Positions 184-15,956 of a stretch of 64,000 nucleotides of DNA are shown here, in pieces. The position numbers and the translations under genes are program-made. The stretch covers positions 62,001-126,000 of the IMG/VR virus record IMGVR_UViG_3300003322_000571. One strand, written 5' to 3'. The stretch's first letter is position 1. Every line of letters starts with the position of its first letter. The notes under the pieces are model-generated. The model saw only the letters and a list, made by a program, of their open reading frames with translations, made no database searches and was not told where the DNA came from.

Positions 184-292
184 GATACCCCTCCAACGCT
201 TATTTATGGACTTGCATTGCGATTGGTCCAGACTTCCCTGAGAAGATCGATCCGATCACTCGTCAACTCAAGTTGTACAACTAAGTACACCT

Positions 293-390
293 GCCAGCGT
301 TTCTAATATTGGCCTTAGGGGTGCCCTTATAAAGCACTAAGACCCGTCTAGATCAGGCGGTTAATGTGGGTTCGATTCCCATCGCTGGTA
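293..390 (+). tRNA. tRNA with anticodon UAU (Ile/AUA by anticodon) and a long variable arm
   Basis: Acceptor GCCAGCG/CGCTGGT with discriminator A390; D-arm TCTAA/TTAGG; anticodon arm GTGCC-CTTATAA-AGCAC; variable stem CCGTCT/AGGCGG; T-arm GTGGG-TTCGATT-CCCAT. CCA is not encoded. Confidence 0.88.
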
Positions 391-434
391 CACACAACCC
401 TAATATTTCTGTTGGGGTAACGTACTCAACCATA

Positions 435-440
435 TATACT
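435..440 (+). promoter_or_regulatory. sigma70-type -10 element (TATACT) for the small-RNA transcript starting at ~447
   Basis: TATACT ends 6 nt before the first paired base of the Y-like RNA; no clear -35. Confidence 0.5.
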
Positions 441-446
441 TTCTTC

Positions 447-515
447 AGCTGTTGCGTAGTTCAAGGGTTACTTCTTTTGGTGAAACTATCCCCTTGACGT
501 TTTAATCTCAGCTTT
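447..515 (+). ncRNA. candidate minimal Y RNA (Ro60 ligand)
   Basis: Terminal stem AGCTG(447-451)/CAGCT(509-513) with a U tail; helix GT[T]CAAGGG(459-467)/CCCTTGAC(491-498) with a single bulged pyrimidine, as in the GU[C]CGAG/CUUGAC Ro60 site of animal Y RNAs; 1.1 kb upstream of a Ro60 gene. Confidence 0.65.
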
Positions 516-526
516 AACATATGTAC

Positions 527-1375: not shown

Positions 1376-1560
1376 AACGTGACATCAAAGATCATCCGTT
1401 ATTGAAAACGATGACGGCTGAGCAACTGTTGCAAATGCTCGTTGATGTTCGAGAAGTTGCATGGGTCGAAGGCCAAGATGGACGAACGAAAGAAGATTTT
1501 TACAACGCTTTAACGCAAATTTGTCGCATCACACGTGATGTTGACAACTACCATTTTTAA
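1372..1560 (+). CDS. hypothetical protein
   Basis: ATGA coupling with the previous ORF. Confidence 0.65.
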   Translation: MKRDIKDHPLLKTMTAEQLLQMLVDVREVAWVEGQDGRTKEDFYNALTQICRITRDVDNYHF

Positions 1561-1573
1561 CTGGAGAAACGAT

Positions 1574-3250
1574 ATGTCAAAACTCAATCCAACTGGTCGT
1601 AACGTTACGACAAACATTGTTGCGGTTGCTGCGAACCGTGGTGAACAGCTTGCTGTTTCTGCGAATGGCAACTTGCAATTCAAGAAGGACTCCTACCAGA
1701 CGTTGTACGAAACAACTGTTTCGACGATGCTTGGCAAGGGCAACCAACTGAATTCTGCTGATGCGCTTGTGCAAAAGCTGAAGGCGTCCGTTCGTTCTGT
1801 TGTTGCTGATGGCGCCAGCTCATTCGACTTCATTGCGAACCTCGCAATCCACGCACGTACGGAGATGAACGTCCGTACGATCCCAATCGTTCTTGTGGTT
1901 GAATTTGCGAAGGCGCTCGCCGATCAGCGTCAACCGTTGGTTGCACGTGTTGATGCGATTGAACAAGAACTGACTACAGCTCGTAAGGCTAAGCGTGCGA
2001 CTTCGTCAATCGTTGAGCGCCTGACTGCAGCTCGCGAAGACGCTGAAATCTACACGTATGGCAACATGCGTCAGCTCGTCAATGACGTGATTCAGCGTGC
2101 CGACCAGATCACTGATCTGTACGCATATGCACTGCAAGTGTTCGGTGGCAAGAACAAGATCCCGATGGCGATCAAGCGTGGTGTTGCTGATGCTTTCAAC
2201 AAGTTCAGCGAATACGCGTTCGCGAAGTACAACCGTGACGGTGCTGTCAAGTTCCGTGACGTCCTTCGTATCGTTCACCCAACTGCTTCGACGATCAAGC
2301 AAGGCGAAATCTTTGACAAGATCATGAAGGATACGCTTTCCGTCCCGTACACTTGGGAAACTGAGTTGTCGGCCAACGGTCAGAAGCCAGTTGCAGAACG
2401 TCTGACGCAGAAGCAGCTGTGGACGCAGCTCGTCACGTCTGGTAAGGTCGGTTACATGGCGTTGCTCCGCAACCTGCGTAACATCATCAGTGCTGGTCTT
2501 GATGACGATGTTGTCAAGAAGCATGTTCTCGATGTGATCTCCGATCCTGCACGCGTTGCAAAGAGCAAGCAATTGCCGTATGACTTCATTGAAGCATACA
2601 ACATCGTCAAGCCACTTGACGGTCGTTTCGCAACCGCAGTGTCGAAGGCACTTGATGCTAGTGCTGCGAACTTGCCAGAACTTGGTAAGCGCGTGTGGCT
2701 GATTGTTGACTACTCCGGCTCGATGGGTCATGGTCCGACTTCTGCATTCGGCGGTGGTGTGTTCCTCGCTTCGGCATTGCTGAAGGCTGCAGGTTCGACT
2801 GCTTCTCGTCTTGCTGTGACGTTGTTCGGTTCGACTGCATTGACGTTGAAAGACGTTGATACGAACCATTCGATGCTCGGTCTCCAGCAGATCCTCGAAA
2901 GCTACCGTAAGGATGGCATCAGCGGTTCGACGAATTTCCGTGCAGCTCTTGACCAGAAGTCTCAGCTCGGTTTCGAACCTGACACGATCATTGTGATCAC
3001 TGACGGTGAAGTCAATGGCTTCCCGTACGGCGTGATCAAGAACGTTGCAGGTCGTAGCGTGATGAAGATGGCAGTCAACATGTCTGTTGCAACATCGACT
3101 CCGATGTCGCAGCATGACGGCTGGTATTCAATGGCAGGCTGGTCTCCAGCTATGTTCAAGTGGATCCCGGCAATGCGTGACGCCGGTTCTGTAATCGAAC
3201 AGCTTGCTGTTCCTTACAAGGGTGTCCCTTCAGCTAAGGTTGAAGAATAA
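1574..3250 (+). CDS. rsr: Ro60/Rsr-like TROVE + vWA RNA-binding protein
   Basis: TROVE features (IQRADQIT, KRGVADAFNKFSEYAFAKY, RDVLRIVHP, TWETELS, GYMALLRNLRN, SKQLPY) plus vWA MIDAS (DYSGSM, GSTNF, ITDGE). Start set at the ATG after GGAGA. Confidence 0.93.
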   Translation: MSKLNPTGRNVTTNIVAVAANRGEQLAVSANGNLQFKKDSYQTLYETTVSTMLGKGNQLNSADALVQKLKASVRSVVADGASSFDFIANLAIHARTEMNVRTIPIVLVVEFAKALADQRQPLVARVDAIEQELTTARKAKRATSSIVERLTAAREDAEIYTYGNMRQLVNDVIQRADQITDLYAYALQVFGGKNKIPMAIKRGVADAFNKFSEYAFAKYNRDGAVKFRDVLRIVHPTASTIKQGEIFDKIMKDTLSVPYTWETELSANGQKPVAERLTQKQLWTQLVTSGKVGYMALLRNLRNIISAGLDDDVVKKHVLDVISDPARVAKSKQLPYDFIEAYNIVKPLDGRFATAVSKALDASAANLPELGKRVWLIVDYSGSMGHGPTSAFGGGVFLASALLKAAGSTASRLAVTLFGSTALTLKDVDTNHSMLGLQQILESYRKDGISGSTNFRAALDQKSQLGFEPDTIIVITDGEVNGFPYGVIKNVAGRSVMKMAVNMSVATSTPMSQHDGWYSMAGWSPAMFKWIPAMRDAGSVIEQLAVPYKGVPSAKVEE

Positions 3251-3813: not shown

Positions 3814-5136
3814 ATGTCAAGTCATGTATTGACGCTCTTCAACCCGATTGTTAGAGCGATTAAAAAGGGATACGTTCAGTATCAGAATCGAAAAGAAGAT
3901 AAAGCGTGGAACACTCTCCGTGCGGAAGAACTTGCAAAACTCGATAGTAAATCTCATAATTGGTACACCGTATTGGTCGATAATCAACTGAAGACAGTTC
4001 GTGGCCAAAAGGAATTGAACGCGAACCGCCAACAAAAGGTTGATGCATCGTACTTCGAATTCTTGTTCAAACTGGGATGCAAGGTTGCACGAGAGTATGC
4101 TGTACTACCAAACATCATCGGCATGCAGCCGTTGCATAGTCCTGTTGGTTTGGTGTATCACATGGAGTACACACAAAAACCAGTCACTTCAGAGCAAAAT
4201 GATGTTGGAAGTGCCGATATCGGTAAGTATCGCCTTGAAGTGATCAGTCATGCTGTCGTTGCATTGACTGAAAGGTTGAGCACCCACGTTGATCCTAACG
4301 TAGCTACTGTCCTGGGACAGAAGGATAAGACACTAGTTGACAAGTTAGTTGACGTTCTCGGGGGAGAAATCGCTCGTGAAATGCTGATTGACATTCTTAA
4401 CGATTTGAGACATCTCGGTCGTCAGAACAGAAATCACTTTGAAGTCATCACCGCATCTGACAGTCATAAAGCAGTATATCTCAACAAAATCTGCAATGAG
4501 ATTGCTGCAGAAACACGACGAGGCCCTGCGAATTGGATTATCGCATCGATTTCAACGGTTTCGAAATTGCAAAGTGCGCCGTTCTCATACTTTAGCTCTG
4601 GTAAGTCCAACCGTGATAGCAGTTTGCTGTTAATGCACGTTGGTCGGCTTAATGGAGTAATTGAAGTTTACGCTTCAACAGAGGTCAAAGACGATGAGAT
4701 TTTGATTGGCTACATGGGCGGTAACGGCGCCACAGATACAGGTTACGTATTTGCTCCATATATTCCTGTTGTTCCAGGTAATGTTGTACTTGATCCTGTA
4801 ACACTTGAGCCGATGGTTGAATTCATGACTCGCTACGGTAAAACCGCATTTAAGAATCTGTCGGACGATTTTGGCAACCTTGTAATCCCACGTCATTCTA
4901 CAGGTGAAAAATACTACCGCATTGTTGAATTCGCAGAACCTAAAGAAGGCGTATACGATCCAACCGCGCTCGTTGAAGATTTTGTGTTCCCTGCGACTAA
5001 AGAACCTCAGTTTCTTGCACCTCTAACAGAGCAATTGCTTGGTAAATCGAACCTTAATATCGAAGAAGACTCGTCTGTTGAGTTGAAAACAAACCTTCCA
5101 GATAGTACTGAGGTGAACGATAAACCGTTCGTATAA
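3814..5136 (+). CDS. divergent T4 gp23/gp24-family capsid protein paralog
   Basis: IIGMQPLHSPVGLVY, TRRGPANWIIAS, GRLNGVIEVY, LIGYMG...DTGYVFAPYIP, DPVTLEP...FMTRYG. Confidence 0.85.
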   Translation: MSSHVLTLFNPIVRAIKKGYVQYQNRKEDKAWNTLRAEELAKLDSKSHNWYTVLVDNQLKTVRGQKELNANRQQKVDASYFEFLFKLGCKVAREYAVLPNIIGMQPLHSPVGLVYHMEYTQKPVTSEQNDVGSADIGKYRLEVISHAVVALTERLSTHVDPNVATVLGQKDKTLVDKLVDVLGGEIAREMLIDILNDLRHLGRQNRNHFEVITASDSHKAVYLNKICNEIAAETRRGPANWIIASISTVSKLQSAPFSYFSSGKSNRDSSLLLMHVGRLNGVIEVYASTEVKDDEILIGYMGGNGATDTGYVFAPYIPVVPGNVVLDPVTLEPMVEFMTRYGKTAFKNLSDDFGNLVIPRHSTGEKYYRIVEFAEPKEGVYDPTALVEDFVFPATKEPQFLAPLTEQLLGKSNLNIEEDSSVELKTNLPDSTEVNDKPFV

Positions 5137-5154: not shown

Positions 5155-5325
5155 ATGTCCAATCAAGTTACTTTCCCAAAGGGCAAGCAAGTCAATCGCA
5201 GTGGTGAACGCACTCGTTTGACGCGTCAAACGACCGTCACTGTTATCCGTAGCGAACCAGCTCGTGACGGCAAGACTCGCGTGTTCTGGAAGTCGCATCG
5301 CGGCGAAGCTAACGCACTCGTCTAA
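5155..5325 (+). CDS. small basic protein, 56 aa (not in track)
   Basis: AAGGA SD, MSNQVTFPKGKQVNRSG...; terminator follows. Confidence 0.7.
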   Translation: MSNQVTFPKGKQVNRSGERTRLTRQTTVTVIRSEPARDGKTRVFWKSHRGEANALV

Positions 5326-5346
5326 TCACAATAGACATTGATCATC

Positions 5347-5372
5347 AACACCGCCCTCGTGGCGGTGTTTTT
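5347..5372 (+). terminator. intrinsic terminator
   Basis: AACACCGCC-CTCGT-GGCGGTGTT-TTT. Confidence 0.8.
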
Positions 5373-5406
5373 GTTCCTGTTTGTTTTCCCCTGCAACTAT
5401 AAGATA

Positions 5407-5681
5407 GTCCGTGAAATACCGGGCGCAATTATGGCTTTGGGAGGTTAGCGTTCGTGCTAATATACCATTCGTTAGGCGGCTTGCAGCGCATAGAACGATA
5501 AACGGCGGAGGGATCCAGGCGTCAATGCCTCCCTTGACTGAAGCAAAACTGATTGACTAACCTTTGATAAAGGCGGCGGGGTACGGCTCTGCTAGTGACC
5601 GGCTGGCCTAACTTCGTGTTGCATAACTACGCTGGGAATCCCGGCTATACCTCCATCGTTTGCATGAGATAACCGGTGGAC
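5407..5681 (+). ncRNA. candidate ~275-nt structured RNA of unknown family
   Basis: No credible ORF in the gap; nested helices 5407-5422/5673-5681, 5423-5433/5622-5632, 5471-5477/5606-5612; possible pseudoknots 5521-5526/5552-5557 and 5440-5449/5644-5654; -10-like TATAAGAT at 5398-5405. Confidence 0.5.
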
Positions 5682-5696
5682 ATTTAAGGAGAGATT

Positions 5697-6257
5697 ATGA
5701 AAGAGATTGAGCGAAAATTCTTGGTTAACTCTGCTCAGTTCAACAGAGACATCAGTGTGCTCGAGAACTACGGAGTGGACATTGTCAAGTATTCGATCAT
5801 GCAAGGTTACTTGTCGACGGGTATTGATATGCCGATTCGCATCCGGCATCGATCGCATTTTGATCCAGTTGCCGTTGCAACGGTCGATGCTTACACGATG
5901 ACTGTTAAGGCTAATCGTACTGGTATCACGTGCGATGAGATCGAGTTCGATATCCCTGGTGATAAGTTTAATCAGCTGTTTAGGCTTTGTGGTGATAACG
6001 TTCTGGTAAAGTCGCGTTATGTCGTACCTTATCGAGGCAGTATTTGGGAAGTTGACATGTTTCATGGGGACTTACAAGGCCTTGTTGTTGCGGAGATTGA
6101 ATTGCAACATGAGGATGATCTTTTCGTACATCCTGTGTGGGTTGATACTCAAGTAACTGCCGACTCGCGGTATGCTAATGCGAACCTCGTGAAGCAGACG
6201 TTTGACATCCTAAGTAACGAATTGGTATGGAAGAATGTTGAACGATTTAGGGTTTAA
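5697..6257 (+). CDS. CYTH-domain (triphosphate tunnel) protein
   Basis: EIERKFLV, IMQGYL, RIR, KSRY, WEVDMFHG..GLVVAEIEL. Confidence 0.9.
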   Translation: MKEIERKFLVNSAQFNRDISVLENYGVDIVKYSIMQGYLSTGIDMPIRIRHRSHFDPVAVATVDAYTMTVKANRTGITCDEIEFDIPGDKFNQLFRLCGDNVLVKSRYVVPYRGSIWEVDMFHGDLQGLVVAEIELQHEDDLFVHPVWVDTQVTADSRYANANLVKQTFDILSNELVWKNVERFRV

Positions 6258-6472: not shown

Positions 6473-6645
6473 TGGACGAGTTTAATCCGTACGATCCTGA
6501 GCTTGCGCAACAGATCACAGAACATGCACAGAGATTACTAGATGGTCTTTTGAAGAGTTCCCATCTGCAAAGTAACTCTCCTGTCCAACAGTGGTTCGAA
6601 GCCAATCCACAACTACCTTTCAATGATTTCTGGAATCCAAAATGA
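6472..6645 (+). CDS. hypothetical 57-aa protein (not in track)
   Basis: MDEFNPYDPELAQQI...; translationally coupled at both ends. Confidence 0.55.
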   Translation: MDEFNPYDPELAQQITEHAQRLLDGLLKSSHLQSNSPVQQWFEANPQLPFNDFWNPK

Positions 6646-7790
6646 GCAAATTTGCTGTTGAAGTCGTCCGTATCCGCGCAATCGAACCGATCACCGGAGC
6701 TGACGCAATTGAACTCGCTGTTGTTGGTGGCTACCGTTCTGTCGTTAAGAAGGGTGACTACAAAGTCGGCGATCTCGCCGTGTACATTCCTGAACAAGCA
6801 ATCGTCCCTGATTGGTTGCTCGAAAGGATGAATCTCACTGGTCGTCTTGCTGGGACGAATAAGAACCGCGTAAAAGCAATCAAGCTTCGCGGTTGTCTGT
6901 CACAAGGTTTGCTGATTCCCGTCAAGCATGTTGCAGCTTCCGGTGCGAACTACATTCAGAATGATGTAAGTCTGATTCCTGTTAAGGAAGGCGATGACGT
7001 TGCTGATTTCCTTGGTATCGTTAAGCATGAAGTGCCGATCCCCGCACACCTTGCTGGTGAAGTGTACAACGCAGGTAGCCACTTGACTGTTCCGTACGAT
7101 ATCGAGAACTACAAGAAGTTCGTCGATGTGTTTGAAGATGGTGAAGAAGTCGTGTTCACCGAAAAACTGCATGGCACATTCACCGGTATCGGTATTCTGC
7201 CGCGTGGTGATTGGGAGGAAAAGCACTTCCTCAGCCGTTTCGTTATCTTCAGCAAGGGACTTGGTGCACGAGGTCTGTGCTTCAAGGATTGCGATAACAA
7301 CGCAGACAATCTGTACGTTCGCACGCTGATGGAGTCCGACATCTTCTCTCGTCTGTCTGACCTGATGGAGGAGATGGAAGAAGAGCACGGCTTTGATCGT
7401 CCTTTGTTCCTGCTCGGAGAAACGTTCGGTGCAGGTGTACAAGACTTGCAGTACGGTAACCTGCCGGCTTCGTTCCGCCTGTTTGACGTATGCGTTGGCT
7501 ACCGCGGTGATCAGTTCTTCTTCGACTACGAAGGTCGTGTCCGCCTCGCGAACCATCTTGAAATTCCGATGGTTCCGATTCTGTACAAGGGTCCGTTCAG
7601 CCAAGCGGTGCTCGATCAGTACACGAATGGCAAGGAAACGGTTTCTGGTAAGGAATCACACATCCGCGAAGGTGTTGTGATCACTCCTGTCGTTGAACGT
7701 GAACATCCTGAACTCGGCCGTGTGATCTTGAAGTCTGTCTCTGCAGACTACCTGCTTCGCAAGAATGAAAACGCAACGGAGTACAACTGA
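6642..7790 (+). CDS. RNA ligase, DRB0094/Rnl5 family
   Basis: N-terminal IEPITGADAIE module; motif I TEKLHGT, GETFG, FDV, EGVV, LKSVSADYL. Confidence 0.92.
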   Translation: MSKFAVEVVRIRAIEPITGADAIELAVVGGYRSVVKKGDYKVGDLAVYIPEQAIVPDWLLERMNLTGRLAGTNKNRVKAIKLRGCLSQGLLIPVKHVAASGANYIQNDVSLIPVKEGDDVADFLGIVKHEVPIPAHLAGEVYNAGSHLTVPYDIENYKKFVDVFEDGEEVVFTEKLHGTFTGIGILPRGDWEEKHFLSRFVIFSKGLGARGLCFKDCDNNADNLYVRTLMESDIFSRLSDLMEEMEEEHGFDRPLFLLGETFGAGVQDLQYGNLPASFRLFDVCVGYRGDQFFFDYEGRVRLANHLEIPMVPILYKGPFSQAVLDQYTNGKETVSGKESHIREGVVITPVVEREHPELGRVILKSVSADYLLRKNENATEYN

Positions 7791-8035: not shown

Positions 8036-9133
8036 ATGAACCGTCTTCCTTTTGGTCAGCAACAGACCACAACGGCACAACCAGTTGACATGAGTGCGTT
8101 CATTCAAGTGAACCCGACTCCTGCTCAGCCGGTCGTCGTTCATCAACCGCAGACGCGTGCACTGACTGTGATCAGTGATAAAGACATCCAGAACTTCGGG
8201 ACGGCGTCGACGAATCGGATCTCTGCAACGTCGCAGAAGATTCTCGCTGGTACGAAGGCCTCTGCAGTCGATGACTTTGGCGACAAGCTGAATGAGCTCG
8301 TTGCTACGACAAAGAAGCTCGATCCTGCGGATATCGGCAAGCCTAGTCTGATCAAGAAGCTGTTCGGGATCGGCTCCAGCGTCAAGGATCAATTCCAAGC
8401 GCAGTATCAAACCGTTGAACAGCGGATGAATACGCTGATCGCGGAGATTGATTCGATGGCGAAGCTGATGGAGCAACGAATCGATGATCTCGAGACGATG
8501 TACAAGGAAAATGAGGATGCGTACAAGCAACTCAGCCAAGACATCGCTCAGATCAACAGTATCGTCGCGACGATGAAGGCTGATCTTGCAGCACAACCAA
8601 CGCCGACTGATCCGATCGAAGCGCAGCGTCTCAATGACTATCAGGAACTGATCGACCGGCTCGAAAAGCGTGCTGATGATCTCGAACGTGGAAAGCAGCT
8701 CGTCATCCTGTCGCTGCCGGAAATTCGGATTGAGCAGACGAACAAGCGCAATCTCGTTGCAAGTATCGCAACGCTGAAGAGCACGACGATTCCGGCTTAC
8801 CAAGGTCTGTTCTCGCGTTACATCCTGGCGATGGAAACGAAGAAGGGCAACCAGGTCGTCGCTGCTTTGCAGGATGCAACTGATGAAGCGTTCCGCAAGC
8901 AAGCTGACCTCGTTCGTCAGAATGCGGTTGACTCTGCGAAGGCTCAACAACGGTCTGTCGTGACGACGGAGACGCTGATTCACTGCCGTGATCAGATGCT
9001 TGCAACTCTCGACGACGTCAAGAAGATCAATGACGCTGGCCGTAAGGCACGTCAAGACGCTCGTCCGCAACTCGAACAACTGGAACAGTCGCTGATCGCA
9101 CGCGCTGCTCCGCAACAACTTTCTCACAACTGA
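8036..9133 (+). CDS. telA: toxic anion resistance protein (TelA/KlaB family)
   Basis: Coiled-coil protein with IQNFG, LIKKLFG, QYQTV, RLEKRADDL, LPEIRIEQ..N..L...I, TIP. Confidence 0.85.
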   Translation: MNRLPFGQQQTTTAQPVDMSAFIQVNPTPAQPVVVHQPQTRALTVISDKDIQNFGTASTNRISATSQKILAGTKASAVDDFGDKLNELVATTKKLDPADIGKPSLIKKLFGIGSSVKDQFQAQYQTVEQRMNTLIAEIDSMAKLMEQRIDDLETMYKENEDAYKQLSQDIAQINSIVATMKADLAAQPTPTDPIEAQRLNDYQELIDRLEKRADDLERGKQLVILSLPEIRIEQTNKRNLVASIATLKSTTIPAYQGLFSRYILAMETKKGNQVVAALQDATDEAFRKQADLVRQNAVDSAKAQQRSVVTTETLIHCRDQMLATLDDVKKINDAGRKARQDARPQLEQLEQSLIARAAPQQLSHN

Positions 9134-9149
9134 ACGTAGGAGTTCAAAA

Positions 9150-9887
9150 ATGGCTGGTATCAATCTGCAAAAACGCGCCGAAGCTGTCGGCATCGTCCTG
9201 GCAAAGCGTGGCATCACGAAGGTGCCCCCGGTTCGTGTCGGCATGGCACTGGACGTTTCTGGCTCTGCACAAACGTTCTATACGAGCGGCGTGATGCAAG
9301 AAACGATCGACCGTCTGCTCGGCGTTGCGCTGAAGTTCGACGACAACGGTGAACTCGACTCGTGGCTGTTCCACAACGACGTTCTCCCTCAACTGCCGAC
9401 GCTGACGGAAAGCGATGAAGGTACGTACGTCAAGAACGTCGTCCTCAAGCAACGCGGTCTGTGGGGTGGTACGTCGTACGCTCCTCCGCTGAAGGCTGCG
9501 ATGAGCTACTACTTCCAAGGTCCTGCTCCCGCCCCTGCTGCGAAGTCGGGTGGTCTGTTCGGCCTGTTCAAGAAGGAAGCTGCGCCCGCACCGGCTCCCG
9601 CTACCAAGCAAGACCCGGCAATGCTGCTGTTCGTCACCGACGGTGCGAACGGTGACCGCGCTGAAGCTGCTCAAGTGCTCCGCGAAGCTGCGAAGAGCTC
9701 GCCGGTGTACTTCCAAATGGTCGGTATCGGCCGTGCATCCGAGTTCGACTTCATCCGTCAAATGGCTGACGAGCTGCCGAACGTCGGGTTCGTCAACCTC
9801 AGCACGCTCAGCATGACCGATGAACAGCTGTACGAACAGCTGATCAATCCGGAATTCTGTGAGTGGATCAAGACGCTCAAGGCGTAA
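9150..9887 (+). CDS. vWA domain protein, TerF-C-terminus type
   Basis: ALDVSGS, FDDNGELDSWLF, GGTSYAP, FVTDG, YFQMVGIG. Confidence 0.88.
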   Translation: MAGINLQKRAEAVGIVLAKRGITKVPPVRVGMALDVSGSAQTFYTSGVMQETIDRLLGVALKFDDNGELDSWLFHNDVLPQLPTLTESDEGTYVKNVVLKQRGLWGGTSYAPPLKAAMSYYFQGPAPAPAAKSGGLFGLFKKEAAPAPAPATKQDPAMLLFVTDGANGDRAEAAQVLREAAKSSPVYFQMVGIGRASEFDFIRQMADELPNVGFVNLSTLSMTDEQLYEQLINPEFCEWIKTLKA

Positions 9888-9901
9888 TTCAACGACCGAC
9901 A

Positions 9902-9931
9902 AAAAGGGAGGCTCGACCTCCCTTTTCTTTT
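9902..9931 (+). terminator. intrinsic terminator
   Basis: AAAAGGGAGG-CTCGA-CCTCCCTTTT-CTTTT. Confidence 0.8.
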
Positions 9932-9944
9932 CTTAAGGACACAG

Positions 9945-11222
9945 ATGGACACTCAACTATTCATTCCAGAAAAGCTGAAAGTTGGCTACCAAAAGCGTGA
10001 AGGTACGTATACGAGTAAACTAGCGTACGTGATCTACTACGACGCTAAGGGAAAGCTACGTAAGGAAACGTCGTGGCAGGGTTGGAGAAGCAAGGACATC
10101 GAACCTGATGACTTCGAAAACATCCCAACGACAGGGTTCATGATCAACAAGGGAATCACTCGCGGTGGTTATGATTGGTACTCTGATACCGTGACGAAAG
10201 TCCGTATCTGGGATCCGCGCGACTTTGAGATTGAGATCACGCTCGCCAACCTGATCGCGATCCTGATGCATAGTGATGTCTCTAAGCGAGATATCAACGT
10301 TCCTTGTGTGTATGCGTGGCACGGTTCTGACCTCGTTCTTCTTCCGACGAATACAGAAGAATACGAACTGTCGGCGAAGCATACTGCAAAGCAATCGCTC
10401 AAGTTTAGTTCGAAGGAACTAAAGATTGGCGCTACGTACAACATCAAGAAGGACAGCTCACAAGTTGTTTACCTCGGCTACTACGACCATTATGTTCCCG
10501 TTGATAAGTCAGGGGTTAAGGTCAAGCGCTGGTACAGCGTAGATGGATTGATCAAGCAAGGGATCAGCGGCAAGAAGCATGTATTCTACAATCTCACTGA
10601 CGATACGTTCAATTATTCAGCGCCATCTGCATTGATTGCAACGGTTGCGGATCTTGAGATTCATCCTCAGTATGCTGAACTACTAGACAAGTACTATGCA
10701 CAGTTTGAATCGCAGTTGATTGGCGGCTTGTATCTAAAGCCAAAGAATCCTCCTCCTTCTAGTCTACCGAATTACTATTACTACAGGTTCCCCACTTGGG
10801 TAAAGGTGTCTGATACGGTGTATGTCGACATTCAACTGAATGTTAACGTCGAACGTCCATATCATTATCACTGGAATGATCCAGTCAAACGGAACAAGGA
10901 TATGAGGATCGTCATTGATACAAAAATCAAGAACATTTGTGTCTATGACGAGGATACCAACTCTGTTAAGCTCAAGCCGGAATACTGGTCAGCATTCCCA
11001 ATCAGTTTCAACGATCCACAAATCACCGCTGTTGTGCAGCCGATCTTTGACATGTGGAGGCAGTTAGTCCAAGCGGAGTTCGAACAAACCCACGACATCT
11101 CTTATAACCACGAGGAACATTACAAGAAGATTGAGGCACAATTCCAACACGTGTTGGGGGAACGTCCCGCTTTTGTGATGATCGACGGTAAGAAATGTGC
11201 TAATGGTCCCACCATCTACTAA
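9945..11222 (+). CDS. hypothetical protein, paralog 1
   Basis: N-terminal ~200 aa similar to the next gene (IPE..VG.Q.R.GTYT.KLAYVIY.D..GK.RKETSWQ.WR; RIWDPRDFE.EIT). Confidence 0.85.
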   Translation: MDTQLFIPEKLKVGYQKREGTYTSKLAYVIYYDAKGKLRKETSWQGWRSKDIEPDDFENIPTTGFMINKGITRGGYDWYSDTVTKVRIWDPRDFEIEITLANLIAILMHSDVSKRDINVPCVYAWHGSDLVLLPTNTEEYELSAKHTAKQSLKFSSKELKIGATYNIKKDSSQVVYLGYYDHYVPVDKSGVKVKRWYSVDGLIKQGISGKKHVFYNLTDDTFNYSAPSALIATVADLEIHPQYAELLDKYYAQFESQLIGGLYLKPKNPPPSSLPNYYYYRFPTWVKVSDTVYVDIQLNVNVERPYHYHWNDPVKRNKDMRIVIDTKIKNICVYDEDTNSVKLKPEYWSAFPISFNDPQITAVVQPIFDMWRQLVQAEFEQTHDISYNHEEHYKKIEAQFQHVLGERPAFVMIDGKKCANGPTIY

Positions 11223-11224
11223 TC

Positions 11225-12517
11225 ATGAGCTCTAAACTATACATCCCGGAAACGATCCTTGTTGGTTTTCAGAACCGCGCTGGAACGTACACAGGCAAAC
11301 TCGCCTACGTGATCTACAAGGATCATACTGGCAAGATCCGCAAGGAAACGTCCTGGCAGAACTGGCGTGACCATGACATCGACACCCTCGAGCTCAAGAA
11401 TACTCCACAGAGCGGCTTTACGTTCAACAAGGGTGTTCAGCGAGATAACCGGTGGGCTGGTTCCGGTCGTTCGATGTTCCGTATCTGGGATCCGCGCGAC
11501 TTCGAGTTCGAGATTACCGTTGACAACACGATTGCTATTCTAACGCATAGTGACGTGTCTAAGCGTGACATCACAGAACCATGTGTGTTCGCTTGGGACG
11601 GTACTGAACTGATCCTGCTGCCGATCAATTCTGAAGAATACCAGTCGTCACTTGTCCATACAGCACGTCAAGCAAAGAACGTTGAGACTAAAGACCTTGT
11701 TGTCGGTCATTCGTACATGGCGAAGAAAGAAGGCGTAGCCGTCGTCTACATGGGCCGTCATGACGTGTACGAATGGAAGCAATCGTACAGCGGACATAAT
11801 GCTGGATACAATTACGGCCATACGTCAACTGGCATGGTTAAGAAGAAGGCGAAAGCTCATACGTTCTACGTTCCTCCGTACGAAGAAACGACAAAATCGG
11901 GTTATGTGATCAAGCACGCTGCAGAGTTTGTAACGAAAGCAGACCCGAAGGCATATCTGTCTGAGTGCGTTCAAGCAGAAGTGCATGAAGACTATCCGAC
12001 GCTGATTGAACAGTTTTACGGACAAGGAACTCATCAAAAGATGAGCGGGTTGACGATTGAACCGTACGAAGACCGGATCTTTAAGAACAGCACAATCGGC
12101 GGTTGGCTGATGCTGTCTGATACAGAAGCAATTCGTATTCAGACGGATGCCAATGGCAATGTCAGGTGGCAAAAGTCAGCTGCATTCGACGGTAATGTCG
12201 TTCAACTGTCGCATGGTGAGGAAGTTGACAGGTATGCAAGTACGTACTACCATTACGGGAACAACCAGCGCGTTTACCCTCGTCGTGACCTTCCGGGATT
12301 GAGTGCTCAAGATGAACGTGTTGCAAGTATCATTGAGCAAATGATGCGCGACTTGCTTGACGGTGGGTTTGCTTTGTCAACCGACAATGTTGAAGAAAAT
12401 GTCAAGATTCGTCTTGCGAATGGTGAATTGCTCCGTCAAATGTGTCATAAATACAAGGTCGGGTACTTGAGGTCAGTAATGGCCGATGGTACTGTGGCAA
12501 CTAGCAAATCTTTCTAA
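11225..12517 (+). CDS. hypothetical protein, paralog 2
   Basis: Tandem paralog of 9945..11222. Confidence 0.85.
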   Translation: MSSKLYIPETILVGFQNRAGTYTGKLAYVIYKDHTGKIRKETSWQNWRDHDIDTLELKNTPQSGFTFNKGVQRDNRWAGSGRSMFRIWDPRDFEFEITVDNTIAILTHSDVSKRDITEPCVFAWDGTELILLPINSEEYQSSLVHTARQAKNVETKDLVVGHSYMAKKEGVAVVYMGRHDVYEWKQSYSGHNAGYNYGHTSTGMVKKKAKAHTFYVPPYEETTKSGYVIKHAAEFVTKADPKAYLSECVQAEVHEDYPTLIEQFYGQGTHQKMSGLTIEPYEDRIFKNSTIGGWLMLSDTEAIRIQTDANGNVRWQKSAAFDGNVVQLSHGEEVDRYASTYYHYGNNQRVYPRRDLPGLSAQDERVASIIEQMMRDLLDGGFALSTDNVEENVKIRLANGELLRQMCHKYKVGYLRSVMADGTVATSKSF

Positions 12518-12547
12518 CATTTCTTAGACTTACACAAGGACTTTATT

Positions 12548-12979
12548 ATGACAACTCTAGACGAACAAATCCGCGGCATGTTTGCCAAGCTGAATGACCG
12601 CAAGGCAAAGCTCGAAACACTGAAGCAGCAGTCTGCTCCGAAATGGAAGACGACTGGTACGTTCCGCCAGATTGGTGCAACGTCGGTGACGAGCATGCAG
12701 ACTGCATCGAAGGAAACGATCATCGAGATCGCTACTCAGGTCGAACTGCTCGCAGGAGCACAAGAATCGGTTGCAAAGAAGCTCGGTACAGATGCTACCG
12801 CACTGATCCAAGGCTACAAGCTGGAAGATTGGTATCATGACTTCCAGAAGCGCCTGGCGACAATCAATCAACGCGATGAAGAGGCAGCGATTGCTGATCT
12901 CGAAAAGCGTCTGAACAGCGTTCTCTCGCCTGAAGAACGTCGCCGTATCGAAGTTGAACTCCTGCTCAAGGAAGTTTGA
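12548..12979 (+). CDS. coiled-coil hypothetical protein
   Basis: AAGGA SD; terminator follows at 13002-13030. Confidence 0.8.
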   Translation: MTTLDEQIRGMFAKLNDRKAKLETLKQQSAPKWKTTGTFRQIGATSVTSMQTASKETIIEIATQVELLAGAQESVAKKLGTDATALIQGYKLEDWYHDFQKRLATINQRDEEAAIADLEKRLNSVLSPEERRRIEVELLLKEV

Positions 12980-13041
12980 TAGACAATTAGTAGTACAAAC
13001 CAAAACGACCTTCGGGTCGTTTTCCTTTTTGGAGATTTGTT

Positions 13042-13374
13042 ATGGGGTATACGTTATATCTGTTCTTGCAAGACTTGTTCCTGCACTTGTTCGCAATTGC
13101 CGTGGTTGTCGTCGGCACTGCATTTATGAGTTTACTCACCGGAGGGATCGCAGTGTGTTCCCTAGTTGTTGTTAAATTGCTTATCAACGGCTTTTGTGTG
13201 TTTATTCATCATCCATTTCGTTTCCCTCTAACGGATAATTGGACGGTCGGCGAGAAACGCGTGGCTACGATTGTTGGTGCTGTCTGCTTTGTGTATAGCT
13301 GCTTGTTTGTCGTTTACTCACCTGGGATGGAGCGGACTCGCTATATTTTGACAGGTCAACACTACCATGGATGA
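13042..13374 (+). CDS. membrane protein (~3 TM)
   Basis: GGAGA SD; hydrophobic segments. Confidence 0.65.
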   Translation: MGYTLYLFLQDLFLHLFAIAVVVVGTAFMSLLTGGIAVCSLVVVKLLINGFCVFIHHPFRFPLTDNWTVGEKRVATIVGAVCFVYSCLFVVYSPGMERTRYILTGQHYHG

Positions 13375-13597
13375 CTACTTGATCATGCTCGCTGAGCAGT
13401 ACCATCTTGATTGTGATAGGTACGATGCAACAGTGTGTTCAGGAATGTCAGAAGACGGTACACCAATGCCAATTGGTCCTTATGAACTTGGTCTCGTAAA
13501 TCAAAATGCAAGGCGTGTTATTCGACGTCTACAACATTTGACATTTGACCATGAAGGACTAATGAAAGCAATTAGTATCGTCGGTGCGAGACAGTAA
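13367..13597 (+). CDS. hypothetical protein
   Basis: Overlapping-start ORF. Confidence 0.6.
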   Translation: MDDYLIMLAEQYHLDCDRYDATVCSGMSEDGTPMPIGPYELGLVNQNARRVIRRLQHLTFDHEGLMKAISIVGARQ

Positions 13598-13637
13598 ACC
13601 ACCTGTTTTTTGAGATGAAGATTTCATGAAGAACCTG

Positions 13638-13666
13638 TTGATTTATATTGATGGGTTAATTAAGGT
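13638..13666 (+). promoter_or_regulatory. sigma70-like promoter
   Basis: TTGATT-N17-TAAGGT upstream of the DUF475 gene. Confidence 0.55.
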
Positions 13667-13704
13667 GACGTGTCTTTCAACAACCAACTCTACGGAGTAA
13701 TTCA

Positions 13705-14727
13705 ATGTTCAAATATTACGGTAGTTCGTACATCTTCACCGCGATCGCGCTGGTGCTGTCCTACTTCCTGCTGGGAGGATGGGGTGCCGTCGTGATCGTC
13801 GGTGTTCTCGCAGTGATGGAGACGTCCTTGTCGTTTGACAATGCAGTCGTCAACGCGAGTGTGCTGAAGAACTGGGACGAGAAGTGGCGTCAGCGGTTCC
13901 TCGTGTGGGGTCTGCCGATCGCTGTGTTCGGCATGCGTCTCGTGTTCCCGCTGCTGATCGTCGCGATCACCGCAAGCCTCGGTCCGGTCGAAGCACTGAT
14001 GCTCGCGATCAATGAGCCGAAGCGTTACGAAGAAATCATGATGGCTGTCCATCACGAAGTCGCAGCGTTTGGTGGCATGTTCCTGCTGATGGTGTTCATC
14101 GACTTCTTCCTGCAAGAAGAGAAGGAACATCACTGGATTCCGTTCATCGAAGGCCCGCTGACCAAGCTCGGCCGTCTCGGCGTGGAAGTTGCACTCGCCC
14201 TTGGTGTTCTGCTGCTGACGACTCACTTCATCGGTGCGGAAGAACAGCTGGCTTTCCTGACTGCTGGTATCTACGGTCTGATCACGTACCTCATCGCACA
14301 AGCCGTTGGTACTCTGGCGGGCGGTGAAGAAGGTGCTGACGAAATGGCAGGCAACATCATCAAGCAAGGTGTTGGTGGCTTCATCTACCTGGAACTGCTT
14401 GACGCTTCGTTCAGCTTCGATGGTGTGATCGCTGCGTTCGCTCTGACCAACAACATCTTCGTGATGATGCTCGGCCTGGCCGTCGGTGCGATGTTCGTTC
14501 GTTCGATGACTTTGCACCTTGTTGATAAAAACGTGCCGTCCAAGTACCGCTTCCTCGAGCATGGTGCATTCTGGGCCATCGGTCTGCTCGCTGCTTTCAT
14601 GTTCGTTGGTGCAACCGGTCACGAACTGCCGGAATGGATCGTTGGTCTGACTGGTGCTGCTGTGATCGTGATCGCCCTGATCAGCTCGATCCGTGCGAAC
14701 AAGAAGGACGCTGAAGTGACCAAGTAA
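13705..14727 (+). CDS. DUF475 / TerC-like integral membrane protein
   Basis: ETSLSFDNAVVNA, FGMRLVFP, YLELLDASFSFDGVI.AFA, LEHGAFWAIG. Confidence 0.9.
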   Translation: MFKYYGSSYIFTAIALVLSYFLLGGWGAVVIVGVLAVMETSLSFDNAVVNASVLKNWDEKWRQRFLVWGLPIAVFGMRLVFPLLIVAITASLGPVEALMLAINEPKRYEEIMMAVHHEVAAFGGMFLLMVFIDFFLQEEKEHHWIPFIEGPLTKLGRLGVEVALALGVLLLTTHFIGAEEQLAFLTAGIYGLITYLIAQAVGTLAGGEEGADEMAGNIIKQGVGGFIYLELLDASFSFDGVIAAFALTNNIFVMMLGLAVGAMFVRSMTLHLVDKNVPSKYRFLEHGAFWAIGLLAAFMFVGATGHELPEWIVGLTGAAVIVIALISSIRANKKDAEVTK

Positions 14728-14808
14728 GTTACCTGAAAAGGTAGTTGACTTACCACATAGGGTAGAAGATGATTCTTCTACCCTATTTTTCATTTGCAGA
14801 GAACAAAC

Positions 14809-15240
14809 ATGAGCGAAGCCAGTGTTACTCCGTGGGTGCCGAACATGGATGATTACGTCGACCGTTGGCTGGTGCAAAACGCCAGCAACGTGATCTACCT
14901 CATTGAGGCAACCTCGTTCGAAATCAGCACTCTGTACACCCGCTACAAGGACACGTGGAAGGATGTGACACACGGTGGCCCGATGGTGACGGTAGGTCAC
15001 ATCAATGGCCGTCCGATCGTCGTCATGATGACGATCCACAACATCGAAGGCAGCGACTTCCTGTTCTACGAAGCAACCAGTCAACTTGTCGACTTCGTGA
15101 TGGTTGAAGATTGGTTCAAGACCAAATTCCCTCACCTGTTTGCACCGGACGACGTGCACCAACGGTGTGACGCCAACAACTTCCACAACGCAGCTCACAA
15201 GGCAATTCGCATTCGCGAGAAGGCAGGAGAGACGAAATGA
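14809..15240 (+). CDS. hypothetical protein
   Basis: ATG after GAGA; coupled to the HAD gene. Confidence 0.7.
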   Translation: MSEASVTPWVPNMDDYVDRWLVQNASNVIYLIEATSFEISTLYTRYKDTWKDVTHGGPMVTVGHINGRPIVVMMTIHNIEGSDFLFYEATSQLVDFVMVEDWFKTKFPHLFAPDDVHQRCDANNFHNAAHKAIRIREKAGETK

Positions 15241-15950: not shown

Positions 15951-15956
15951 ACAATC

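What the first reader, a model, noticed from the sequence alone, without database searches (positions are those of the whole stretch)
5407..5681. ~275-nt highly pairable intergenic RNA candidate with pseudoknots and a second CUUGAC site
Seen: one of the largest gaps without a credible ORF in the window, between a terminator and the CYTH SD. Helices: GTCC+ACCGG/CCGGT+GGAC closing; GCGCAATTATG/CATAACTACGC (9 of 11); GTTAGGC/GCCTAAC; AGGC/GCCT whose loop GTCAAT complements ATTGAC (5552-5557); and GGAGGTTAGC/GCTA[T]ACCTCC crossing the main stem. GGCGGAGGG (5504-5512) faces CCCTTGAC (5531-5538), resembling a Ro60 site. Several segments loosely echo RNase P RNA in the same order (GAAATACCGGGC, GAAGCAA, GCTGGCCTA, GAATCCCGGCTA), but the invariant GAAAGUC and helix P1 are missing. 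Inference: a novel large Y-type or RNase-P-derived RNA, or a cis-regulator of the CYTH-ligase operon.
Basis: partly seen in the sequence, partly recalled or inferred. Interest (0 to 1): 0.7.

Follow-up and report, generated by a model that had tools for sequence, protein, structure and literature searches.

The report
New double-pseudoknotted jumbo-phage leader RNA
The gap upstream of the CYTH gene of this soil jumbo phage encodes a real, strongly conserved, roughly 280-nt folded RNA with two pseudoknots that matches no known RNA family; it is neither a Y RNA nor an RNase P relative, and its function is still unknown.

Summary
The window is part of a 350-kb jumbo phage from a root metagenome. 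Positions ~5385-5666 (+) hold a genuine structured RNA.

- **Copies and relatives.** A second copy, 80% identical, lies 104 kb away in the same genome. Relatives sit at the same syntenic place (TROVE/Ro60 ... gp23-like ... small ORF - RNA - CYTH - RNA ligase - Ter genes) in at least three other soil or wastewater phage lineages.
- **Covariation.** On six sequences, 96% of pair cells are paired, against 34-44% when partners are slid. Eighteen pairs change on both sides (0 of 500 shuffles reach this).
- **Pseudoknots.** The alignment model did not contain either pseudoknot, yet both covary.
- **Conservation.** The RNA is better conserved than the neighbouring genes.
CUUGAC is not conserved.
- **Y RNA and RNase P.** The Y RNA and RNase P readings fail their defining tests. 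AGUCCG is one strand of a local hairpin that covaries. A separate RNase P-like RNA lies elsewhere in the genome.
- **Known families.** No Rfam family matches.
- **Most likely role.** It is probably a cis-acting 5' leader domain, riboswitch-like or otherwise regulatory. The main rival is a processed trans-acting RNA of the RNA-repair island. No transcript data exist.

The parts
5347..5369 (+). Terminator-like hairpin plus U tract ending the gp23-like/small-ORF unit. It marks the upstream boundary of the element.
   Evidence: An analogous but unrelated hairpin precedes copy B and the L028, L030 and L031 copies.
5385..5666 (+). Whole conserved structured RNA domain, copy A.
   Evidence: Homology with copy B starts near UUUCYCUGCAAC and ends at GCAUG. 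CM R1 hits in relatives. Pair counts.
5391..5396 (+). PK1 5' strand CUGCAA. It pairs with the loop of h2 (5481-5486, UUGCAG).
   Evidence: CUGCAA/UUGCAG in copies A and B becomes CUACAA/UUGUAG in L028, L030 and L031, a G-C to A-U change. All 6 pairs are Watson-Crick in 5 sequences, and the helix was not part of the CM.
5407..5424 (+). Hairpin Ha: GUCCG / CGGGC with loop UGAAAUAC.
   Evidence: C-G becomes U-A in L030 (GUCUG/CAGGC).
5440..5445 (+). GGAGGU, candidate long-range helix P2 with ACCUCC at 5649-5654.
   Evidence: Predicted by RNAalifold and in the single-sequence MFE of copy B. It is invariant in the 3 sequences that have both sides, so it is unproven.
5446..5459 (+). Hairpin h1 (UAGC/GCUA). 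In relatives it is UCGC/GCGA capped by UUCG, GAAA or AAAA.
   Evidence: Two compensatory pairs and tetraloop swaps.
5469..5498 (+). Hairpin h2: UCGUU/AACGA, internal loop AG/AUAG, GCG/CGC. Its 8-nt loop carries the PK1 3' strand at 5481-5486.
   Evidence: U-A becomes C-G in the lower stem. G-C becomes A-U in the upper stem in L030 and L031.
5503..5540 (+). Three-part hairpin h3 (CGG/CUG, AGGG/CCCU, AGGC/GCCU) with loop GUCAAU.
   Evidence: Six of its eleven pairs change on both sides. The middle stem becomes AUUG/CAAU, GUGG/CCAC, AUGG/CCAU or GCGG/CCGC.
5552..5557 (+). PK2 3' strand AUUGAC. It pairs with the h3 loop GUCAAU at 5521-5526.
   Evidence: GUCAUG x CAUGAC in L028 gives two compensatory pairs. 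The helix was not part of the CM.
5561..5573 (+). Hairpin h4 (CCUUU/AAAGG).
   Evidence: CCAUU/AAUGG in B and B2; UCUUG/UAAGA in L028.
5579..5609 (+). Hairpin h4b (GGGU.CGGCU / GGCUG.GCCU) with a near-invariant 12-nt loop CUGCUAGUGACC.
   Evidence: U.G becomes C-G in B and L028. G.U becomes A-U in B. The bulged A is paired by an inserted U in B.
5616..5645 (+). Adjacent hairpins h5 (loop GCAU) and h6 (GCUGGG/CCCGGC, free-varying loop).
   Evidence: h5 reads GUGUU/AAC(U)AC, GCUUU/AAAGC or GCGC/GUGC. The h6 loops are AAU, GCU, UCUAU, UUCAC or AUA, with the stem kept.
5655..5666 (+). Conserved 3' tail AUCGUUUGCAUG. It repeats the 5' strand of h2 and can pair with the h2 3' strand (5493-5499).
   Evidence: cols 106-111 x 273-278. 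U becomes C in L028 and L014, matching A to G at 5494. The suggested switch role is inference only.
5667..5696 (+). Variable spacer and Shine-Dalgarno sequence (AAGGAG) before CYTH.
   Evidence: 80% identical to L013, compared with 100% for the RNA. The sequence differs in every lineage.
5697..6257 (+). CYTH-domain gene, the first gene downstream.
   Evidence: Pfam PF01928. The RNA lies directly upstream of the CYTH homolog in L013, L014 and L028.
1535..3250 (+). TROVE + vWA (Ro60-like) gene of the same conserved island.
   Evidence: Synteny in L028, L029 and L030.
6642..7790 (+). RNA ligase gene of the same conserved island.

Best explanation
Positions ~5385-5666 encode, on the + strand, a compact RNA domain of about 280 nt belonging to a previously undescribed family.

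**Architecture (shown).** It has eight local hairpins (Ha, h1, h2, h3, h4, h4b, h5, h6). Two pseudoknots tie them together: the 5' end with the h2 loop, and the h3 loop with the following linker.

**Role (inferred).**
- No terminator separates the RNA from the next gene, so it is transcribed as the 5' leader of the CYTH - RNA ligase - TelA/TerF/TerC operon.
- A diverged paralog would be the leader of a second operon of small unknown genes.
- It most likely acts in cis, as a riboswitch-like or protein-binding regulatory domain that sets expression of the genes behind it.
- A candidate switch is the conserved 3' tail AUCGUYUGCAU. It duplicates the 5' strand of h2 and could displace it.

**Status.** The structure, strand, paralogy, synteny and conservation are shown. 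Transcription, the cis mode of action, the switch and any ligand are inferred.
For: **Structure**
- 96% of 301 pair cells are paired, against 34-44% with slid partners.
- 18 pairs change on both sides, against 5.5 +/- 1.8 in shuffles (0 of 500).
- Both pseudoknots covary although they were not in the model used for the alignment.
- Seven G.U pairs would be A.C on the other strand, so the RNA is the + strand.

**Conservation**
- The RNA is 79% identical to L028 at the nucleotide level, against 54-75% for the seven neighbouring genes.
- It is 100% identical to L013 over 145 nt, although the adjacent CYTH genes are 59% identical.
- Fragments 100% identical occur in wastewater and soil runs with unrelated flanks.
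- Both paralogs are kept in a second phage.

**Leader position**
- In five contexts (A, B, L013, L014, L028) the conserved part ends 30-50 nt before a same-strand start codon, with no terminator between.
- Two copies in front of different operons is the usual pattern for cis-regulatory RNAs.
- The tail can pair with the h2 3' strand in every variant, with matching changes.
Against: - No transcript data exist. No RNA run holds the sequence.
- No promoter is recognisable between the upstream terminator and the RNA, so the 5' end is unknown.
- No conserved terminator or SD-sequestering helix was found. The SD differs between lineages and is weak in L028.
- The proposed tail/h2 switch would cross helix P2, and neither is proven.
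- Conservation is very high even in stems. The RNA also sits inside an RNA-repair island between a Ro60 gene and an RNA ligase gene, as Salmonella Y RNAs do. Both points fit a trans-acting RNP RNA equally well.
- Only six or seven sequences from about four lineages are available.
Confidence: 0.45

Rival explanations
1. It is a stable trans-acting non-coding RNA, cut out of the operon transcript. It works as the RNA subunit or scaffold of an RNA-repair or quality-control particle, with the phage Ro60, the CYTH enzyme or the RNA ligase. That would make it a functional analogue of Y RNAs without being one.
For: - It lies in a conserved island (PTH2, TROVE/Ro60, CYTH, RNA ligase) in four lineages. 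This resembles the position of yrlA and yrlB between rsr and rtcB in Salmonella (my own knowledge of Chen et al. 2013/2014, PMC4201824).
- Its sequence conservation is extreme, including loops and linkers.
- Y RNAs also occur as paralogs.
- It is insulated from the upstream gene by a terminator.
Against: - It has no terminator of its own and no terminal stem.
- Copy B lies among unrelated small ORFs, far from any RNA-repair gene.
- It has no Ro60-binding motif.
- Phages with related RNA ligases, with or without TROVE, lack it.
Confidence: 0.3
2. It is a ribozyme, for example a self-cleaving or self-processing domain that separates the upstream late mRNA from the downstream operon, or some other catalytic RNA.
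For: - A double-pseudoknot architecture with many invariant unpaired nucleotides is typical of ribozyme cores.
- It lies at an operon junction.
- Self-cleaving ribozymes are common between phage genes (my own knowledge).
Against: - No Rfam ribozyme family matches, even at E <= 10.
- It is far larger than the known self-cleaving classes.
- No cleavage-site signature was identified.
Confidence: 0.08
3. It is an RNase-P-derived RNA or a canonical Y RNA (YrlA-type or metazoan-type).
For: - There are short echoes of RNase P conserved regions (AGUCCG, CCCGGCUAU). GGUCCG is present in the L028-type copies.
- A Ro60 gene lies 2.1 kb upstream.
- The phage has 55 tRNA genes.
Against: - RF00010 and all other Rfam models give no hit on the element.
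- AGUCCG pairs locally with CGGGC and covaries. The bases before it vary: GAUAG, AUUAG, AGAAG, UAAGG.
- CCCGGC is the 3' strand of hairpin h6.
- A different locus of the genome (11575-11993) already matches RNase P class A over its full length, and it is unrelated to the element.
- There is no CGAA motif, no terminal stem and no tRNA-like module. CUUGAC is not conserved.
Confidence: 0.03
4. The conservation reflects a DNA-level or mobile module rather than an RNA function. Examples are a recombination cassette exchanged between phages, a replication or packaging signal, or a non-autonomous transposon.
For: - Segments 100% identical have sharp borders to divergent flanks in several samples. This points to some recent exchange.
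- The module includes the upstream terminator from 5319.
Against: - Compensatory changes that keep strand-specific G.U pairs and two pseudoknots indicate selection on a folded single strand.
- The two copies in one genome are only 80% identical and sit at conserved syntenic places in diverged phages, unlike an active mobile element.
- There are no terminal repeats and no transposase nearby.
Confidence: 0.05

Closest known systems
Riboswitches and other large structured 5' leader RNAs (e.g. cobalamin, T-box, glmS leaders)
   Same: - It lies on the coding strand directly upstream of an ORF.
- It has a compact multi-helix fold with pseudoknots and invariant unpaired bases.
- Several copies in one genome sit in front of different operons.
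   Different: - It has no sequence or structure match to any Rfam family.
- No recognisable expression platform was found.
- The ligand or partner is unknown.
- It is larger than most aptamers.
Y RNAs (metazoan Y, Deinococcus Yrn1, Salmonella YrlA/YrlB, phage Yrl1/Yrl2 of Thermus phage phiLo; PMC4201824, PMC12135203)
   Same: - It is encoded near a Ro60/TROVE gene and an RNA ligase gene in an RNA-repair island.
- It occurs as paralogs.
   Different: - It is about 280 nt, against 80-130 nt for Y RNAs.
- It has no 5'/3' terminal stem.
- It has no GNCGAA, CGAA or GGUCCGA site in a bulged helix.
- It has no tRNA-like domain.
- One copy is far from any Ro60 gene.
Bacterial RNase P RNA class A (RF00010)
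   Same: - It is of similar size to the smallest RNase P RNAs.
- It contains pseudoknots.
- It has short shared words (AGUCCG, CCCGGCUAU).
   Different: - It gives no covariance-model match.
- Those words lie in local hairpins, not in a P4 helix.
- There are no P1-P3 or P15 equivalents.
- The phage has a separate RNase P-like gene.
Large phage-associated RNAs of unknown function (GOLLD, ROOL) and processive-antitermination RNAs (HK022 putL/putR)
   Same: - It is phage-borne, ornate and strongly conserved, and its function is not evident from context.
- Like putL and putR, it occurs as two paralogs, each at the head of a long co-directional operon.
   Different: - It is not homologous to either (Rfam negative).
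- GOLLD and ROOL are two to three times larger and usually sit near tRNA genes.
- put RNAs are about 70 nt and lie just downstream of a promoter, not just downstream of a terminator.

Membership tests
Y RNA (metazoan / YrlA / phage Yrl) | Encoded next to a Ro60/TROVE gene. | tested here: inconclusive
   Copy A lies 2.1 kb downstream of the TROVE ORF, and this arrangement is syntenic in L028, L029 and L030. Copy B is about 108 kb from the window's TROVE gene, and no TROVE gene is nearby, among unrelated small ORFs.
Y RNA (metazoan / YrlA / phage Yrl) | 80-130 nt, with the 5' and 3' ends forming a long stem that carries the Ro60 site. | tested here: not met
The element is about 280 nt. The only candidate terminal helix (UGCAA/UUGCA) is broken in L028.
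Y RNA (metazoan / YrlA / phage Yrl) | Conserved 5' motif (GGUCCGA in animals, GNCGAAN0-1G or CGAA in bacteria and phages; PMC4201824, PMC12135203) in a bulged helix with UUGACU. | tested here: not met
   There is no CGAA in the element. GUCCG pairs locally with CGGGC and covaries (GUCUG/CAGGC in L030). CUUGAC at 5533 reads CGGCUG in B and CAACUG in L028.
Y RNA (metazoan / YrlA / phage Yrl) | tRNA-like T/D-arm module (YrlA). | tested here: not met
   No tRNA, YrlA or Y_RNA model hits 5385-5666, even at E <= 10.
Y RNA (metazoan / YrlA / phage Yrl) | Binds Ro60. | not testable with these tools
   This needs EMSA or co-purification with the TROVE protein (1535-3250).
RNase P RNA | Matches an RNase P covariance model. 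| tested here: not met
   Rfam gives no hit on the element at E <= 10. A genome-wide RF00010 search hits only 11575-11993 and a 6-bit noise site.
RNase P RNA | P4 helix from the conserved GAAAGUCC 5' strand and the CCGGCUUA 3' strand, with a bulged U. | tested here: not met
   AGUCCG and CCCGGC each belong to a local hairpin (Ha and h6) kept by covariation or by loop replacement. The bases 5' of AGUCCG vary without compensation.
RNase P RNA | Cleaves pre-tRNA. | not testable with these tools
   This needs an in-vitro assay. A separate RNase P-like RNA exists in the genome.
Riboswitch / cis-regulatory leader | Lies in the 5' UTR, on the same strand as the regulated ORF and directly before it. 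| tested here: met
   This holds in five contexts, 30-50 nt before the start codon, with no terminator between. Transcription itself was not shown.
Riboswitch / cis-regulatory leader | Conserved sensor fold supported by covariation. | tested here: met
Riboswitch / cis-regulatory leader | Expression platform: alternative pairing that controls a terminator or the SD. | tested here: inconclusive
   There is no terminator. The SD is not conserved. Only one candidate exists, the tail/h2 alternative helix.
Riboswitch / cis-regulatory leader | Binds a ligand or factor and changes gene expression. | not testable with these tools
   This needs in-line probing or reporter assays.

The most novel reading that the evidence does not exclude
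The element founds a new class of large catalytic or RNP-forming RNA dedicated to phage RNA repair or quality control. It could be the RNA partner of the phage Ro60/CYTH/RNA-ligase island, a structurally unrelated functional counterpart of Y RNAs. Or it could be a new riboswitch class sensing a metabolite or damaged-RNA signal that switches on the RNA-repair and Ter stress genes.
Probability: 0.2. Interest if true: 0.85.

Novelty: new variant of a known kind. Interest (0 to 1): 0.62.

Why it matters
Large RNAs with intricate tertiary folds are rare, and most that are known turned out to be ribozymes, riboswitches or RNP cores. This one has several properties that make it worth study.

- It is about 280 nt, has two covariation-supported pseudoknots, and is more conserved than the proteins around it.
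- It is kept as two paralogs.
- It sits at the entrance of a Ro60 - CYTH - RNA ligase - Ter island in jumbo phages that also carry 55 tRNA genes, a tmRNA and a possible RNase P RNA.

If it regulates or takes part in RNA repair, it would give a handle on how giant phages control their own RNA-maintenance machinery. It would also add a new RNA class.

Its known distribution is narrow: one IMG/VR genome plus a handful of short-read contigs from soil, rhizosphere and wastewater.

Tried and rejected
- **Rfam.** All 4227 families were searched at gathering score on the whole window and at E <= 10 on 5250-5800. Nothing fell in the element.
- **tRNA and tmRNA.** ARAGORN found no tRNA or tmRNA in the window.
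- **MFE z-scores.** They are uninformative for copy A.
- **Sequence similarity.** Searches found nothing in INPHARED phages, PLSDB plasmids or E. coli genomes.
- **Exact-motif scans.** IMG/VR (6 scans), JGI metagenomes (2) and GTDB genomes (1) gave only chance hits.
- **Relatives of the gp23-like (annotated major capsid) protein.** None are close.
- **CM R1 on other phage sequence.** It gave no hit on three whole genomes (LR756508.1, CcrColossus, Papperlapapp) or on 13 IMG/VR loci with related RNA ligases.
- **A closing helix P1 (UGCAA/UUGCA).** RNAalifold predicted it on three sequences. I rejected it when L028 broke it.
- **A P4-like pairing AUAG(U)CCG/CGGCUAU and a Y-like pairing UAGUC/GACUA.** I proposed both and rejected both, because Ha covaries locally and the distal bases vary.
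- **CTGCAAC as a phage promoter motif.** It is not recurrent in the window or the genome. T4-type late promoters are absent.
- **CsrB-like, 6S-like and K-turn readings.** I considered these by eye and dropped them because the motifs are absent.
- **A second, broader CM from six sequences.** It could not be built because the calibration forecast exceeded the time limit.
- **Whole Logan contigs.** They could not be searched.
- **Complex prediction.** I did not use it, because it gives no verdict for RNA-protein pairs.
- **B2.** The copy-B ortholog in run X3 was reconstructed from read laying differences only.

Full report
**Setting.** The window is bases 62001-126000 of a 350,089-bp IMG/VR phage record with direct terminal repeats. 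It was recovered from a root metagenome.

The finding lies in a 370-nt gap. Upstream are a gp23-like gene (3814-5136), a 56-codon ORF (5155-5325) and a terminator-like hairpin (5347-5369). Downstream are a CYTH-domain gene (5697-6257), two small ORFs and an RNA ligase (6642-7790). A TROVE + vWA (Ro60-like) gene lies at 1535-3250. TelA, vWA-TerF, TerC/DUF475, HAD and PRTase genes follow the ligase.

**First checks.** Taken alone, these would have dismissed the finding.
- No Rfam family reaches threshold in the window except a tRNA-like hit at 293-390.
- A permissive scan of 5250-5800 gives nothing inside the element.
- The minimum free energy of 5407-5681 is no better than shuffles: z +0.29 on the + strand and -0.57 on the - strand.
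- Public phage records hold nothing similar.

**A second copy.** A search of the phage's own genome found a second copy at 171,748-172,017, about 80% identical over about 276 nt. Profile and covariance-model searches find exactly two copies. Homology starts and stops sharply, from about UUUCYCUGCAAC to GCAUG; the flanks are at background identity of 46-48%. The differences include indels of 1 and 4 nt, and all frames are closed, so the element is not coding. Several hairpins differ by compensatory changes.

**Relatives elsewhere.** All of these come from Logan assemblies of public runs.
- CYTH homologs of 53-54% identity lie on two short contigs, L013 and L014. Both carry the 3' part of the RNA directly upstream of CYTH.
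- Laying contigs of four runs on the window gave 100% identical fragments of the RNA in wastewater and soil samples, with unrelated sequence upstream. One rhizosphere run holds both an A-type and a B-type copy.
- A search with the 56-aa upstream ORF found three homologs. Their contigs, L028 (identical to L029), L030 and L031, contain the RNA at the same place, with CM scores of 142-220 bits.
- L028 and L029 are fully syntenic: PTH2 ... TROVE - 141 aa - gp23-like - 61 aa - RNA - CYTH-like - 91 aa - RNA ligase - TelA - vWA-TerF ... TerC.

**Conservation.**
- The RNA is 79% identical between the window and L028. The seven neighbouring genes are 54-75% identical at the nucleotide level and 33-74% at the protein level.
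- Against L013 the last 145 nt of the RNA are 100% identical, the spacer is 80% and the CYTH gene 59%. Since the RNA tolerates about 20% divergence elsewhere, these perfect matches probably also reflect recent exchange of the module between phages.

**Structure.** On the six-sequence alignment A6 I counted a structure of 71 pairs in 14 helices, including two pseudoknots.

| Measure | Observed | Partners slid by 1-3 columns | 500 shuffles |
|---|---|---|---|
| Pair cells that are standard pairs | 96.0% | 34-44% | - |
| Pairs changed on both sides | 18 | 0-5 | 5.5 +/- 1.8 (0 of 500 reach 18) |

The alignment was fitted to the nested helices, which favours them. The two pseudoknots were not in the model, so they are an independent test.

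The helices, in window coordinates:

| Helix | 5' side | 3' side |
|---|---|---|
| PK1 | 5391-5396 | 5481-5486 |
| Ha | 5407-5411 | 5420-5424 |
| P2 | 5440-5445 | 5649-5654 |
| h1 | 5446-5449 | 5456-5459 |
| h2 lower | 5469-5473 | 5494-5498 |
| h2 upper | 5476-5478 | 5487-5489 |
| h3 base | 5503-5505 | 5538-5540 |
| h3 middle | 5509-5512 | 5531-5534 |
| h3 apical | 5517-5520 | 5527-5530 |
| PK2 | 5521-5526 | 5552-5557 |
| h4 | 5561-5565 | 5569-5573 |
| h4b outer | 5579-5582 | 5606-5609 |
| h4b inner | 5584-5588 | 5601-5605 |
| h5 | 5616-5620 | 5625-5630 |
| h6 | 5631-5636 | 5640-5645 |

Points on individual helices:
- PK1 reads CUGCAA/UUGCAG in copies A and B and CUACAA/UUGUAG in L028, L030 and L031.
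- PK2 reads GUCAAU/AUUGAC in most sequences and GUCAUG/CAUGAC in L028.
- h1 is capped by UUCG, GAAA, AAAA or a hexaloop. The h6 loop changes freely while its stem is kept.
- Seven G.U pairs place the RNA on the + strand.
- P2 (GGAGGU/ACCUCC) never varies and remains a prediction.
- The residual 'unpaired' cells in h3 middle, h4 and h6 come from copy B being one column out of register. Folded on its own, copy B forms each of these hairpins.

The AGGC/GCCU hairpin, its loop pseudoknot with AUUGAC, and the helix containing GGCGGAGGG/CCCUUGAC are real. Three helices are not conserved, or their strands belong to other covarying helices: the closing helix GTCC+ACCGG/CCGGTGGAC, GCGCAATTATG/CATAACTACGC and GTTAGGC/GCCTAAC. 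CUUGAC is simply the 3' strand of h3 in copy A. It reads CGGCUG in copy B and CAACUG in L028, and the hexamer is common in this genome.

**Y RNA.** The genomic neighbourhood is suggestive: a Ro60 gene upstream and an RNA ligase downstream. The defining features are not met.
- Published Y RNAs are 80-130 nt, with a terminal stem and a GGUCCGA or GNCGAA/CGAA motif (PMC4201824, PMC12135203).
- This RNA is about 280 nt, with no conserved terminal stem and no CGAA.
- Its GUCCG is the 5' strand of hairpin Ha, which changes to GUCUG/CAGGC in L030.
- The second copy is nowhere near a Ro60 gene.

**RNase P.**
- No RNase P model matches the element.
- The P4-like words sit in local hairpins.
- The same genome holds a different locus (11575-11993, outside the window) that aligns to RNase P class A over the full model, at 53.6 bits and E 1.5e-16, with recognisable GAGGAA..UC.GGGCU, AGAUGAAUGG and ACA.AACCC..GCUA blocks. 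That locus is unrelated to the element.
- The phage also has 55 tRNA genes and a tmRNA.

**What it does: shown and inferred.** Shown: a conserved, intricately folded + strand RNA domain, in two anciently duplicated copies kept in at least two phages. It sits at a fixed syntenic position at the head of the CYTH-ligase-Ter genes.

Inferred: it is transcribed with the downstream genes, because no terminator follows it in any of five contexts and a start codon follows within 30-50 nt.

The most economical mechanism is a cis-acting leader. It could be riboswitch-like, or a binding site for a phage or host factor. Two copies in front of different operons is the usual pattern for such elements. The conserved tail AUCGUYUGCAU repeats the 5' strand of h2 and can replace it in every variant, which offers a possible switch.

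Against this reading:
- I found no conserved expression platform.
- No promoter is recognisable between the upstream terminator and PK1.
- There are no transcript data.

A processed, trans-acting RNP RNA of the repair island is nearly as likely. A ribozyme cannot be excluded.

**Distribution and novelty.** Apart from the window's own record, the family was found only in Logan assemblies of soil, rhizosphere and wastewater runs. It was not found in IMG/VR, JGI metagenomes, GTDB genomes, INPHARED or PLSDB, nor in phages with related RNA ligases. Literature searches found no description of it. It is therefore a new RNA family, and its kind (leader, RNP RNA or ribozyme) remains to be established.

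Noticed in passing
outside the window: G000:C1:11575-11993 (+) = L023:1501-1919: A candidate phage-encoded RNase P RNA. It aligns to RF00010 (bacterial class A) over the full model at 53.6 bits (E 1.5e-16; gathering score 100), with CR-I, CR-IV and CR-V-like blocks. It lies in the tRNA-rich part of the genome. The huge-phage papers in the library never mention RNase P RNA.
   Followed up: partly
whole genome G000 (outside the window for the most part): ARAGORN reports 57 RNA genes. The 55 visible in the output are 54 tRNA-type calls and a permuted tmRNA (complement 304515-304896, tag ANEGNFRLAA). The tRNA calls include two labelled tRNA-Pyl (anticodon CUA), which would read the amber codon, and one with a 4-base anticodon. 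None lies in the window.
   Followed up: no
window 293-390 (+): A tRNA-like element: Rfam tRNA at 32.4 bits, a 7-bp acceptor stem, a good T arm, a 25-nt variable arm and anticodon loop CUUAUAA. ARAGORN does not call it, and Rfam finds no counterpart in L028 or L030.
   Followed up: partly
window 222-232 and 430-520 (+): UUGGUCCAGA at 222-232 and CCCCUUGAC at 490-498 flank the tRNA-like element and resemble the two strands of a Ro60-binding helix. Window 431-488 is conserved in L028 and L029, and 218-407 and 448-518 in L030. CUUGAC itself is not kept in L028.
   Followed up: partly
window 8036-16781 (+): A Ter-type stress cluster sits directly behind the RNA ligase: TelA, vWA-TerF-like, TerC/DUF475, a HAD hydrolase and a ComF-like PRTase. 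It is syntenic in L028 and L029.
   Followed up: no
window 3814-5136 (+): The gp23-like 'major capsid' gene is only 33% identical to its L028 counterpart, while its neighbours are 55-74% identical. A second weak Gp23 fragment follows the ligase in L028. It may not be the true capsid gene.
   Followed up: no
L028:10210-10270, L030:10207-10267, L031:715-775: The L028-type copies have an extra conserved hairpin (GGGUUGU...ACAACCC) between the terminator and the RNA. L028 also has a near-consensus sigma-70-like pair, TTTACA-18-TATAAT, overlapping the PK1 strand. Copy A has neither.
   Followed up: no
window 5319-5690: The module (terminator + RNA + SD) is 100% identical in fragments from wastewater and soil runs, and over 145 nt to L013, with abrupt borders to flanks that are 59% identical or unrelated. 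This suggests recent recombinational exchange of the cassette between diverged phages.
   Followed up: partly
whole window: The hexamer CTTGAC is over-represented: 79 sites against 45 +/- 7 expected, mostly on the - strand.
   Followed up: no
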